A DNA stretch of 55,676 nt, filler included, from Sluysia triapertura (GCA_046118255.1; 4 parts of 4 records of this genome joined end to end with filler, not necessarily neighbours in it), one strand, 5' to 3'. Counted from the first letter of the whole stretch, positions 12,091 to 12,358 are shown. Numbers and translations: made by a program. Notes: generated from the letters alone by a model not told the origin.

Positions 12091-12358
12091 TTATTTTCGT
12101 TTTCCAAAACATGTTATAGCATTAAATTGGCATCTGATTATGTTTCTTGGTGATTTAGACATGTAAGCGGTATTATATCGCCTATGAAAACGAATCGAAC
12201 GTAAAAATCCATAATCTTTATCAAAATTAGCCTGTAATGTTAATTCAATATTTAAAATCGTTAATATTTATATAACTAACTGTTACTAGCTTATCAGTAC
12301 AGAAAATTGTTAATAAACAAATCATCCACATTGTAACAAATACGAAAACAATTTTCAT
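12091..12358 (-). CDS. AstC: Allatostatin-C/somatostatin-family neuropeptide precursor, 72 aa; exons 12358-12281 and 12231-12091
   Basis: Spliced translation: MKIVFVFVTMWMICLLTIFCTDKLVT|ANFDKDYGFLRSIRFHRRYNTAYMSKSPRNIIRCQFNAITCFGKRK*. It has a hydrophobic signal peptide, a 49-nt phase-0 GT-AG intron, an RR cleavage site, a C-x6-C-F ring like AstC/CC/CCC (CYFNPISCF, CYFNAVTCF, [10 protein letters not shown]) and a G-KRK amidation signal. Confidence 0.88.

What the first reader, a model, noticed from the sequence alone, without database searches (positions are those of the whole stretch)
12091..12358. Hidden two-exon allatostatin-C-family neuropeptide gene with an unusual amidated sequence
Seen: a clean 72-aa precursor, invisible to the ORF track because a 49-nt intron splits it into 26 and 46 codons. 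It has a signal peptide, an RR site and the terminal NIIRCQFNAITCF-G-KRK. Known: AstC/CC/CCC peptides carry a C-x-F-N-(P/A)-(I/V)-(S/T)-C-F disulfide ring and act on somatostatin-receptor-like GPCRs; the AstCCC type is amidated. Inference: the mature peptide is YNTAYMSKSPRNIIRCQFNAITCF-NH2 or NIIRCQFNAITCF-NH2. It combines the AstCC-like RC..NA.TCF core with amidation and a Gln at the ring position usually held by Tyr or Ala. It is the only intact gene in ~13 kb of decayed repeats, and it points to a bilaterian (protostome) host with peptidergic signalling.
Basis: partly seen in the sequence, partly recalled or inferred. Interest (0 to 1): 0.85.

Follow-up and report, generated by a model that had tools for sequence, protein, structure and literature searches.

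The report
Flatworm allatostatin-C/somatostatin-type neuropeptide gene
A small two-exon gene hidden in very AT-rich DNA encodes a secreted precursor of an amidated, disulfide-ringed peptide of the allatostatin-C/somatostatin family, apparently in a flatworm, whose genome also encodes a matching somatostatin-type receptor; the family is well known, but I found no report of it in flatworms.

Summary
On the minus strand, exon 1 (12358-12281, 26 codons), a 49-nt GT..AG intron (12280-12232) and exon 2 (12231-12091, 46 codons plus stop) encode a 72-aa precursor. It has a hydrophobic signal peptide, an RR site and the C-terminus NIIRCQFNAITCF-G-KRK-stop. The AstC ring pattern occurs once in the 619-Mb genome (reversed control 0). 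BLASTP against two natural AstCCC precursors from metagenomes gives E = 4e-06 each. Those precursors show the same terminal layout of ring, Gly, basic residues and stop. The exons are GC-richer than the intron and flanks, and a conserved PHM gene in this genome has a 42-nt intron. The genome also encodes an intronless GPCR whose best 22 solved-structure matches are all somatostatin receptors (1.7e-57), plus PHM and proprotein-convertase domains. The host is probably a flatworm: the receptor's closest named relative is Schmidtea GCR320 (49%), and no arthropod cuticle domain was found. The arthropod AstCC/CCC labels therefore do not apply, and this is an amidated AstC-type gene. Verdict: a real gene and a new member of a known family, of moderate interest.

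The parts
12281..12358 (-). Coding exon 1: start codon, signal peptide and six more residues (26 codons)
   Evidence: Searches give the translation MKIVFVFVTMWMICLLTIFCTDKLVT. GC is 25.6%, against 13% in the upstream flank.
12299..12358 (-). Predicted signal peptide, residues 1-20, with likely cleavage after Cys20 (alternative after Thr17)
   Evidence: mean Kyte-Doolittle hydropathy of residues 3-20 is 2.70, there is no charged residue in the h-region, and the -3/-1 rule is met after residues 17 and 20. It is unique among 103 open Met-initiated 20-mers in the piece. This is a heuristic; SignalP was not available.
12232..12280 (-). Intron, 49 nt, GTTAGT...TTACAG, phase 0
   Evidence: GC 16.3%. 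A 42-nt GT..AG intron in the conserved PHM gene of the same genome shows that this size is normal here. An alternative donor at 12286 would give 55 nt.
12091..12231 (-). Coding exon 2: propeptide, mature peptide, processing signal and stop (46 codons plus TAA)
   Evidence: GC is 29.8%.
12178..12183 (-). Dibasic Arg-Arg prohormone-convertase site upstream of the peptide
   Evidence: AGG CGA. P-domain proprotein convertases are present in the genome.
12106..12177 (-). Predicted mature peptide YNTAYMSKSPRNIIRCQFNAITCF (24 aa). A shorter 13-mer, NIIRCQFNAITCF (12106-12144), is possible after monobasic cleavage at K-S-P-R
   Evidence: Expected [M+H]+ with amide and disulfide is 2838.364 (24-mer) or 1539.756 (13-mer). 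The processing is inferred, not shown.
12106..12132 (-). Disulfide ring plus terminal Phe: C-Q-F-N-A-I-T-C-F
   Evidence: This is the only match to the ring pattern in the 619-Mb genome, with control 0. The invariant columns shared with two natural AstCCC precursors are C, F, N, A, C, F and G.
12094..12105 (-). Gly-Lys-Arg-Lys: amidation donor Gly plus basic residues that a carboxypeptidase removes. The stop codon follows at 12091-12093
   Evidence: L069 (G-RK-stop) and L070 (G-RKRK-stop) have the same layout. PHM-type monooxygenase domains are present in the genome.

Best explanation
This is a real, single-copy gene for a preproneuropeptide of the allatostatin-C/somatostatin type, in an AT-rich genome that is most likely a flatworm's.

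Proposed mechanism:
- The two exons are spliced across a 49-nt intron to give a 72-aa precursor.
- The first ~20 residues direct it into the secretory pathway.
- A prohormone convertase cuts after Arg-Arg, and possibly again after K-S-P-R.
- A carboxypeptidase trims the terminal Lys-Arg-Lys.
- The amidating enzyme turns the exposed Gly into a C-terminal amide, and the two Cys form a disulfide ring.
- The product is YNTAYMSKSPRNIIRCQFNAITCF-NH2 or NIIRCQFNAITCF-NH2. It then acts on a somatostatin/AstC-type GPCR. The best candidate is the intronless 417-aa receptor on contig C181239, and a paralogue on C201380 is second.

Shown here: the gene anatomy, the uniqueness of the motif, the similarity to natural AstCCC precursors, and the presence of the receptor and of the processing-enzyme domains.

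Inferred: splicing in vivo, the cleavage sites, amidation, the disulfide, and which receptor binds the peptide.
For: Gene model.

Signal-peptide-like exon 1, unique in the piece, and an exon/intron GC contrast of 25.6% and 29.8% against 16.3%.

Ring pattern found once in 619 Mb, control 0. With one mismatch allowed the count falls to chance level (17 against 14), and none of those extra hits has a precursor context.

Family definition (two Cys, six residues between, Phe or Tyr after the second Cys) is met: PMC5996578. The core matches AST-C, AST-CC and AST-CCC of lobster and bee: PMC6008092, PMC4704819.

BLASTP gives E = 4e-06 against each of two natural AstCCC precursors fetched from metagenomes, and both have the same ring-Gly-basic-stop C-terminus.

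The layout of a signal-peptide exon followed by a last coding exon is as described for AstCCC genes (PMC6585902). L069 also shows a phase-0 acceptor before its last exon.

Short introns are normal in this genome (42 nt in the PHM gene).

Receptor: the best 22 solved-structure matches of L036 are all somatostatin receptors (1.7e-57), with opioid receptors from 1e-44. A second receptor of the SSTR/opioid group is also present.

Processing machinery: PHM domain 2.9e-22 and P-domain convertases.

Complex prediction of receptor plus peptide: score 0.37 against a best control of 0.01, with the verdict 'weak support'. The runs agree in at least 58% of contacts and the partner's pLDDT is about 50. That mark was reached by 51 of 78 solved complexes and 2 of 108 mismatched pairs, but passes at 0.60 or under are more often wrong than right unless the guess was already likely. 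Peptides are untested by this method, and solved SSTR-peptide complexes may be remembered by the model.
Against: No orthologue was found in any other flatworm. The word-index search found nothing. The exhaustive phmmer search of 1.84 billion representatives gave only two spurious repeat proteins. This is expected when only about 13 residues are conserved, but it is still a blank.

Similarity to known members is limited to 13-14 residues.

Gln at ring position 2 is not seen in the reference peptides I could read, which carry Tyr, Ala or Leu there.

The signal peptide was judged by a heuristic only.

The host identification rests mainly on one receptor's nearest named relative (49% to Schmidtea GCR320) and on the absence of one arthropod domain. 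The species could not be named.

The language-model atlas hits for exon 2 were below the level that counts as evidence (best 0.86).
Confidence: 0.85

Rival explanations
1. It is a secreted Cys-ring peptide that resembles AstC by convergence, or was recruited from it, and does another job. It could be a defensive or predatory secretion that mimics prey hormones (a 'doppelganger' peptide) rather than an endogenous neuropeptide.
For: Only the 13-14 C-terminal residues resemble AstC. Somatostatin-type mimics exist in animal venoms (PMC13311285, seen only by title and abstract). No expression data show in which tissue it is made.
Against: It is a single-copy gene, whereas toxin families are usually expanded. 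A cognate-type receptor is present in the same genome. The precursor layout is identical to that of endogenous AstCCC genes (PMC6585902).
Confidence: 0.07
2. The gene is real but belongs to another organism mixed into the assembly, such as prey, food or a commensal (for example an arthropod), and not to the main AT-rich genome.
For: The assembly is visibly mixed. Three GC-rich COX1 contigs sit beside one AT-rich COX1.
Against: The contig has 22.7% GC. That matches the receptor loci (22-29%) and the AT-rich COX1 contig (23%), not the foreign contigs at 46-47%. No arthropod R&R cuticle domain was found anywhere in 619 Mb. Canonical arthropod AstCCC reads [11 protein letters not shown] (PMC6008092), not RCQFNAITCF.
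Confidence: 0.05
3. It is a chance arrangement of short open frames in AT-rich DNA, or a dead relic that is no longer expressed.
For: There is no transcript evidence and no orthologue. Short ORFs are common: the chance that 26 codons stay open is 0.09, and 0.014 for 46 codons.
Against: The ring pattern occurs once in the genome with control 0. It is directly followed by Gly-Lys-Arg-Lys-stop, preceded by Arg-Arg, and joined by a canonical GT..AG intron to the only signal-peptide-like Met-initiated frame in the piece. The exons are GC-richer than the intron and flanks. All frames are intact.
Confidence: 0.03

Closest known systems
Allatostatin C (AstC) of lophotrochozoans (molluscs, annelids, nemerteans, brachiopods), the protostome counterpart of somatostatin
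   Same: One peptide copy sits at the C-terminus of a short precursor with a signal peptide. Two Cys are separated by six residues and followed by an aromatic residue. The peptide acts on a gamma-rhodopsin GPCR related to somatostatin receptors. Scallop AstC (GHIQCLVNLVACYamide) is also amidated (PMC5996578, PMC8557429).
   Different: This peptide keeps the arthropod-like F-N-A-I-T core much better than the scallop peptide does. I found no report of the family in flatworms in the searchable library.
Arthropod allatostatin CCC (for example [19 protein letters not shown]; lobster AST-C II, honey-bee 'ASTC')
   Same: Amidated C-terminus with Gly plus basic residues and then stop. The core is C-x-F-N-A-[IV]-[ST]-C-F. 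The gene is built as a signal-peptide exon plus a last coding exon (PMC6008092, PMC6585902; natural examples L069 and L070).
   Different: The host is not an arthropod, so orthology to the arthropod-specific CCC paralogue is excluded. There is no AstC/AstCC/AstCCC trio in this genome. It reads R-C-Q where CCC has K-Q-C-A, and the predicted peptide is longer (24 aa).
Arthropod allatostatin CC (for example GQAKGRVYWRCYFNAVTCF of honey bee)
   Same: An Arg comes directly before the first Cys, and the ending is N-A-x-T-C-F (PMC4704819).
   Different: AstCC is not amidated and has Tyr at ring position 2, where this peptide has Gln and an amidation signal.
Vertebrate somatostatin with SSTR1-5
   Same: A C-terminal disulfide-ringed peptide is cut from a small precursor at a dibasic site. 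The receptor in this genome is most similar to SSTR2, 1, 5, 4 and 3 among all solved structures.
   Different: The ring size and residues differ. According to PMC5996578, AstC-type peptides carry an extra Tyr or Phe after the second Cys. Somatostatin is not amidated (my own knowledge).

Membership tests
AstC/somatostatin-type neuropeptide precursors | N-terminal signal peptide | tested here: met
   n-region M-K, an 18-residue uncharged h-region with mean hydropathy 2.70, and -3/-1 sites after residues 17 and 20. It is unique among 103 open Met-initiated 20-mers in the piece. This is a heuristic; no SignalP was available.
AstC/somatostatin-type neuropeptide precursors | Two Cys separated by six residues, with Tyr or Phe directly after the second Cys (definition in PMC5996578) | tested here: met
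   C-QFNAIT-C-F.
AstC/somatostatin-type neuropeptide precursors | A single peptide copy at the extreme C-terminus of the precursor, preceded by a basic cleavage site | tested here: met
   RR lies 24 residues before the end of the peptide, and G-KRK-stop follows it. L069 and L070 have the same layout.
AstC/somatostatin-type neuropeptide precursors | Detectable sequence similarity to accepted members | tested here: met
   BLASTP pairwise E = 4e-06 against two natural AstCCC precursors, with 7 of 13-14 identical and 12-13 similar. The invariant columns are C, F, N, A, C, F and G. Whole-database searches were blank, as expected for a motif of about 13 residues.
AstC/somatostatin-type neuropeptide precursors | Gene layout: one exon with the signal peptide and a few residues, then a last coding exon with the peptide | tested here: met
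   compared with the description of AstCCC genes in PMC6585902. L069 has a phase-0 acceptor before its last coding exon.
AstC/somatostatin-type neuropeptide precursors | A receptor of the SSTR/AstC-R type in the same genome | tested here: met
   The best 22 PDB matches of L036 (C181239, 417 aa, intronless) are all SSTRs at 1.7e-57, with opioid receptors from 1e-44. A second paralogue is in the SSTR/opioid group. The atlas places L036 in the gamma-rhodopsin peptide receptors without resolving the subtype.
AstC/somatostatin-type neuropeptide precursors | The peptide activates that receptor | tested here: inconclusive
   Complex prediction gave score 0.37 against a best control of 0.01, with the verdict 'weak support'. 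The runs agree in at least 58% of contacts and the partner's pLDDT is about 50. Peptides are untested by the method, and solved SSTR-peptide complexes may be remembered by the model. A cell assay is needed.
AstC/somatostatin-type neuropeptide precursors | The gene is transcribed and spliced as modelled, and the mature peptide is amidated and disulfide-bonded | not testable with these tools
PHM and convertase domains exist in the genome, so the chemistry is possible.
Arthropod AstCCC paralogue (orthology) | C-terminal amidation signal followed by basic residues | tested here: met
   CF-G-KRK-stop.
Arthropod AstCCC paralogue (orthology) | The host is an arthropod, and the gene is one of three AstC, AstCC and AstCCC paralogues from the arthropod triplication | tested here: not met
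   No R&R cuticle domain in 619 Mb. The receptor's nearest named relative is planarian GCR320 at 49%. There is only one ring motif in the genome, and the candidate paralogues were rejected.
Arthropod AstCCC paralogue (orthology) | Consensus [11 protein letters not shown] | tested here: not met
   The sequence here is I-R-C-Q-F-N-A-I-T-C-F, against PMC6008092 and L069/L070.

The most novel reading that the evidence does not exclude
This would be the first molecularly identified allatostatin-C/somatostatin-type neuropeptide of a flatworm, and the natural ligand of the planarian GCR320-type receptor. It could also be the molecule behind the 'somatostatin-like peptide' reported since 1986 to lower neoblast (stem-cell) mitosis in planarians (Bautz & Schilt 1986, as cited in PMC9744283). 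If so, it would give a defined peptide-receptor pair for neural control of stem-cell proliferation and regeneration.
Probability: 0.3. Interest if true: 0.65.

Novelty: new member of a known kind. Interest (0 to 1): 0.45.

Why it matters
The somatostatin/AstC system is one of the ancient bilaterian peptide-receptor pairs. Ligands are known from arthropods, annelids, molluscs, nemerteans and brachiopods. In the literature I could search, no flatworm ligand is reported, and the main planarian prohormone catalogue mentions neither allatostatin nor somatostatin.

A defined flatworm peptide with a candidate receptor would fill that gap. It would allow the GCR320-type receptor to be deorphanised. 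It would also make an old observation testable by RNAi and peptide application, namely that a somatostatin-like peptide lowers neoblast mitosis in planarians.

The gene is also a practical example of how short two-exon prohormone genes escape ORF-based and homology-based annotation in AT-rich, fragmented assemblies.

Tried and rejected
No earlier notes and no read evidence could be used, and read laying was not called.

Each exon was searched by reference on its own.

Sequence searches with exon 2:
- Word-index search: no candidate.
- Exhaustive phmmer: two hits, both spurious repeat proteins that add up many weak stretches.
- Pfam: nothing relevant.
- Atlas: small arthropod prohormones, 'Prohormone-1-like', and calcitonin and urotensin-2 clusters at 0.76-0.86. 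These are leads only. I could not confirm what 'Prohormone-1' is.

Paralogue hunt:
- The one-mismatch pattern gave 17 hits against 14 in the control.
- L006 and L014 are copies of a repeat-borne ORF that reads through the motif.
- L019 (CAINAISCF-NKR) lies out of frame inside a 99-aa ORF of another gene.
- All were rejected.

Intron survey: using receptor genes with internal stops was uninformative, because the stops lie at the ends of the matches. It was replaced by the PHM gene.

Species identification: a 118-aa piece of the AT-rich COX1 had a best match of 71%, unnamed. The mitochondrial code test (AAA = Asn) was inconclusive, with only two AAA codons in the piece. ATA aligned with Ile, Val or Leu, which is only a weak hint.

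Receptor and complex: the atlas does not separate SSTR from MCH, galanin, opioid or urotensin receptors for L036. Complex prediction gave 'weak support' only.

Other literature: Zamanian 2011 does not discuss SST/AstC-type receptors.

Foreign contigs: three GC-rich COX1 contigs look foreign and vertebrate-like, and one could be human. After the single comparison I did not save, compare or search them further.

Full report
OBSERVATION

On the minus strand, an ATG at 12358 opens a 26-codon exon, MKIVFVFVTMWMICLLTIFCTDKLVT (12358-12281). It ends at a donor ACA|GTTAGT. Forty-nine bases later an acceptor TTACAG| (the intron is 12280-12232) opens a 46-codon exon (12231-12094, stop 12093-12091). That exon reads ANFDKDYGFLRSIRFHRRYNTAYMSKSPRNIIRCQFNAITCFGKRK. 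The mechanical ORF list shows only fragments of 37 and 23 aa, so the gene is indeed hidden. A second in-frame donor (CTA|GTAACA, GT at 12286) would give a 55-nt intron and drop Val25-Thr26 without touching the signal peptide or the mature peptide. Each exon was handled by reference on its own.

IS IT MORE THAN CHANCE?

The piece has 22.7% GC. A degenerate DNA pattern for the ring C-x-F-N-[PA]-[IV]-[ST]-C-F matches once in the whole 619-Mb assembly, at 12106-12132, and the reversed control matches nowhere. With one mismatch allowed the count drops to chance level (17 against 14), and none of those extra hits has a precursor context.

Around the unique match sit an upstream Arg-Arg, an immediately following Gly-Lys-Arg-Lys-stop, and a canonical intron. 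That intron leads to the only Met-initiated open 20-mer in the piece (1 of 103) that is as hydrophobic (mean hydropathy 2.70) and uncharged as a signal peptide. It has -3/-1 cleavage sites after residues 17 and 20.

The exons have 25.6% and 29.8% GC, the intron 16.3% and the flanks 13-17%. A conserved gene of the same genome shows that such introns are normal here. In the PHM gene on C22903, two exons carrying the HHME-LF-C copper-site motif are separated by a 42-nt GT..AG intron. Together these features rule out a chance arrangement.

WHAT FAMILY?

The published definition of AstC-type peptides is two Cys with six residues between them and a Tyr or Phe after the second Cys (PMC5996578). That definition is met.

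Published peptides for comparison:
- lobster AST-C: pQIRYHQCYFNPISCF
- lobster AST-CCC: [19 protein letters not shown]
- lobster AST-CC: GNGDGRLYWRCYFNAVSCF (all three from PMC6008092)
- honey-bee AstCC: GQAKGRVYWRCYFNAVTCF (PMC4704819)

The present RCQFNAITCF shares C, F, N, A, C and F with the CC and CCC types. It shares the Arg before the first Cys, and Thr at ring position 7, with bee AstCC.

To compare with real precursors by reference, I scanned the metagenome collection with a pattern for an amidated AstC-type C-terminus. This fetched two loci. L069 ends ...[21 protein letters not shown]-stop, behind a phase-0 ...TTCAG acceptor. L070 encodes a complete 142-aa precursor ending ...[31 protein letters not shown]-stop. 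BLASTP of exon 2 against each gives E = 4e-06, with 7 of 13-14 residues identical and 12-13 similar. In the three-way alignment the invariant columns include C34, F36, N37, A38, C41, F42 and G43.

The gene layout is the one described for AstCCC genes: one exon for the signal peptide plus a few residues, then a last coding exon (PMC6585902).

Whole-database searches with exon 2 gave nothing usable. The word index found no candidate. The exhaustive phmmer search returned two repeat proteins that are plainly spurious. Pfam gave nothing relevant. The language-model atlas pointed to small arthropod prohormones and vertebrate ring-peptide hormones at scores below the level that counts as evidence. 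Blanks are expected when only about 13 residues are conserved, but the result is that no orthologue from a related species is in hand.

THE HOST

The window is the whole of contig C26839 in a fragmented assembly of 619 Mb and 263,945 contigs.

The arthropod R&R cuticle domain (PF00379) finds nothing in it, while the rhodopsin-type GPCR family finds at least 150 matches, many of them intronless.

The somatostatin-type receptor described below has as its closest named relative GCR320 of the planarian Schmidtea mediterranea (49% identity). An unnamed assembly protein is closer at 57%. The next named hits, nematode NPR-24 and others, are at 27-30%. I therefore take the host to be a flatworm, probably a planarian or a near relative, with about 80% confidence.

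The species could not be named. The AT-rich mitochondrial COX1 has no close named relative, and a test of the flatworm mitochondrial code had too few informative codons.

The assembly also holds three GC-rich (46-47%) COX1 contigs that are about 80% identical to one another and only 54% identical to the AT-rich one. These are foreign and look vertebrate-like, perhaps food, host or handling contamination. Because one might be human, I did not pursue them after that single comparison. The composition of contig C26839 matches the AT-rich host genome, not these contigs.

CONSEQUENCE FOR THE SUBTYPE LABELS

AstC, AstCC and AstCCC arose by a gene triplication within arthropods (PMC6008092, citing Veenstra 2016). 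A flatworm gene cannot be an orthologue of AstCCC. It is an AstC-type gene that happens to be amidated, as scallop AstC also is (PMC5996578). Only one such gene is detectable in this genome.

RECEPTOR AND PROCESSING MACHINERY

Contig C181239 carries an intronless 417-aa GPCR (L036:229-1479). Its 22 best matches among all solved structures are somatostatin receptors: SSTR2 at 1.7e-57, then SSTR1, 5, 4 and 3. Opioid receptors follow from 1e-44. The atlas places it among gamma-rhodopsin peptide receptors without resolving the subtype. A paralogue on C201380, 37% identical, falls in the same SSTR/opioid group.

The genome also has PHM-type copper monooxygenase domains (best 2.9e-22) and several proprotein-convertase P domains. 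The proposed cleavage and amidation are therefore chemically possible in this animal.

A complex prediction of the receptor with residues 13-42 of the exon-2 product scored 0.37 against 0.01 for the best of three controls, and the verdict was 'weak support'. The runs agree in at least 58% of contacts, and the partner's pLDDT is about 50. The mark was reached by 51 of 78 solved complexes and 2 of 108 mismatched pairs, but passes at or below 0.60 are more often wrong than right unless the guess was already likely. Peptides are untested by this method, and solved SSTR-peptide complexes may be remembered by the model. I count it as a small increment only.

MECHANISM

Shown: the anatomy, the family resemblance, and the presence of receptor and enzymes.

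Inferred:
- co-translational removal of about 20 residues;
- convertase cleavage after Arg43-Arg44 of the precursor, and possibly after K-S-P-R, which is a monobasic site with a basic residue at -4, a type noted in PMC8557429;
- carboxypeptidase trimming of K-R-K, amidation of Phe from the Gly donor, and a Cys-Cys disulfide;
- action on the SSTR-type receptor, which by analogy with the family would be inhibitory through Gi/o (my own knowledge).

Expected [M+H]+ values are 2838.364 for the 24-mer and 1539.756 for the 13-mer.

NOVELTY AND INTEREST

The family is well known across protostomes (PMC8557429, PMC5996578). In the searchable library I found no paper reporting an AstC-type peptide in a flatworm, and the main planarian prohormone catalogue mentions neither allatostatin nor somatostatin. 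Papers in subscription journals, such as Koziol et al. 2016, could not be read, so prior description cannot be excluded.

Planarian literature still cites a 'somatostatin-like peptide' that lowers neoblast mitosis (Bautz & Schilt 1986, cited in PMC9744283 and PMC10559094), and none of those papers gives a molecular identity. If this gene or its planarian orthologue is that molecule, the old observation becomes directly testable.

I rate it a new member of a known kind. Interest is moderate (0.45), and my confidence that it is a real AstC-type prohormone gene is about 0.85.

REST OF THE CONTIG

The six ORFs of 70 aa or more have no Pfam domain. The sequence is AT-rich, with microsatellites and short tandem arrays. 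'No other recognisable gene' is fair. 'Decayed repeats' was not demonstrated.

Noticed in passing
G000 contigs C219470, C200653, C192378 (L065-L067) versus C243991 (L068): The assembly holds three GC-rich (46-47%) full-length COX1 genes, about 80% identical to one another in DNA, beside one AT-rich (23% GC) COX1. This means foreign, vertebrate-like DNA is mixed into the assembly, perhaps from food, host or handling. One might be human, so they were left alone after one comparison.
   Followed up: partly
G000:C181239:229-1479 (L036) and G000:C201380 (L059:840-1769, minus strand): Two intronless GPCRs of the somatostatin/opioid group. The first is clearly SSTR-like and 49% identical to Schmidtea GCR320. 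The second does not separate nociceptin from SSTR4 or SSTR2 (all near 1e-36).
   Followed up: partly
L053 (G000:C22903) 210-521: A PHM (peptidylglycine monooxygenase) gene fragment in which a 42-nt AT-rich GT..AG intron (297-338) separates two conserved exons. It is a useful reference for intron size in this genome.
   Followed up: yes
L006 (G000:C46025 ~772-798) and L014 (G000:C196280 ~645-671): Two diverged copies of a repeat-borne ORF (...NEIDRSKR.VI.K.LNES.LD..NKLKQVDVNI...) that happens to contain C-[FI]-F-N-P-V-S-C-I. It is probably a transposon-derived family and is not a peptide gene.
   Followed up: partly
L069 (Ga0194135_10018814, 2392-2568 minus) and L070 (Ga0206350_10761868, 297-722 plus): Two metagenome contigs carry canonical arthropod-type AstCCC genes ending [14 protein letters not shown](RK)-stop. 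L070 holds a complete 142-aa precursor without introns, so it is probably a transcript.
   Followed up: partly
window 5001-7000: Strongly negative GC skew (down to -0.44 at 5501-6500) in otherwise featureless AT-rich DNA. Unexplained.
   Followed up: no
window 1855-1921 and 3779-3894: Perfect (AAT)13 and (TAT)10 microsatellites, which create a poly-Ile/poly-Leu pseudo-ORF at 1736-1984, and a 29/44/55-nt AT-rich tandem array.
   Followed up: no
window 12286: An alternative in-frame donor (CTA|GTAACA) lies 6 nt upstream of the modelled donor. It would give a 55-nt intron and a 70-aa precursor lacking Val25-Thr26.
   Followed up: partly
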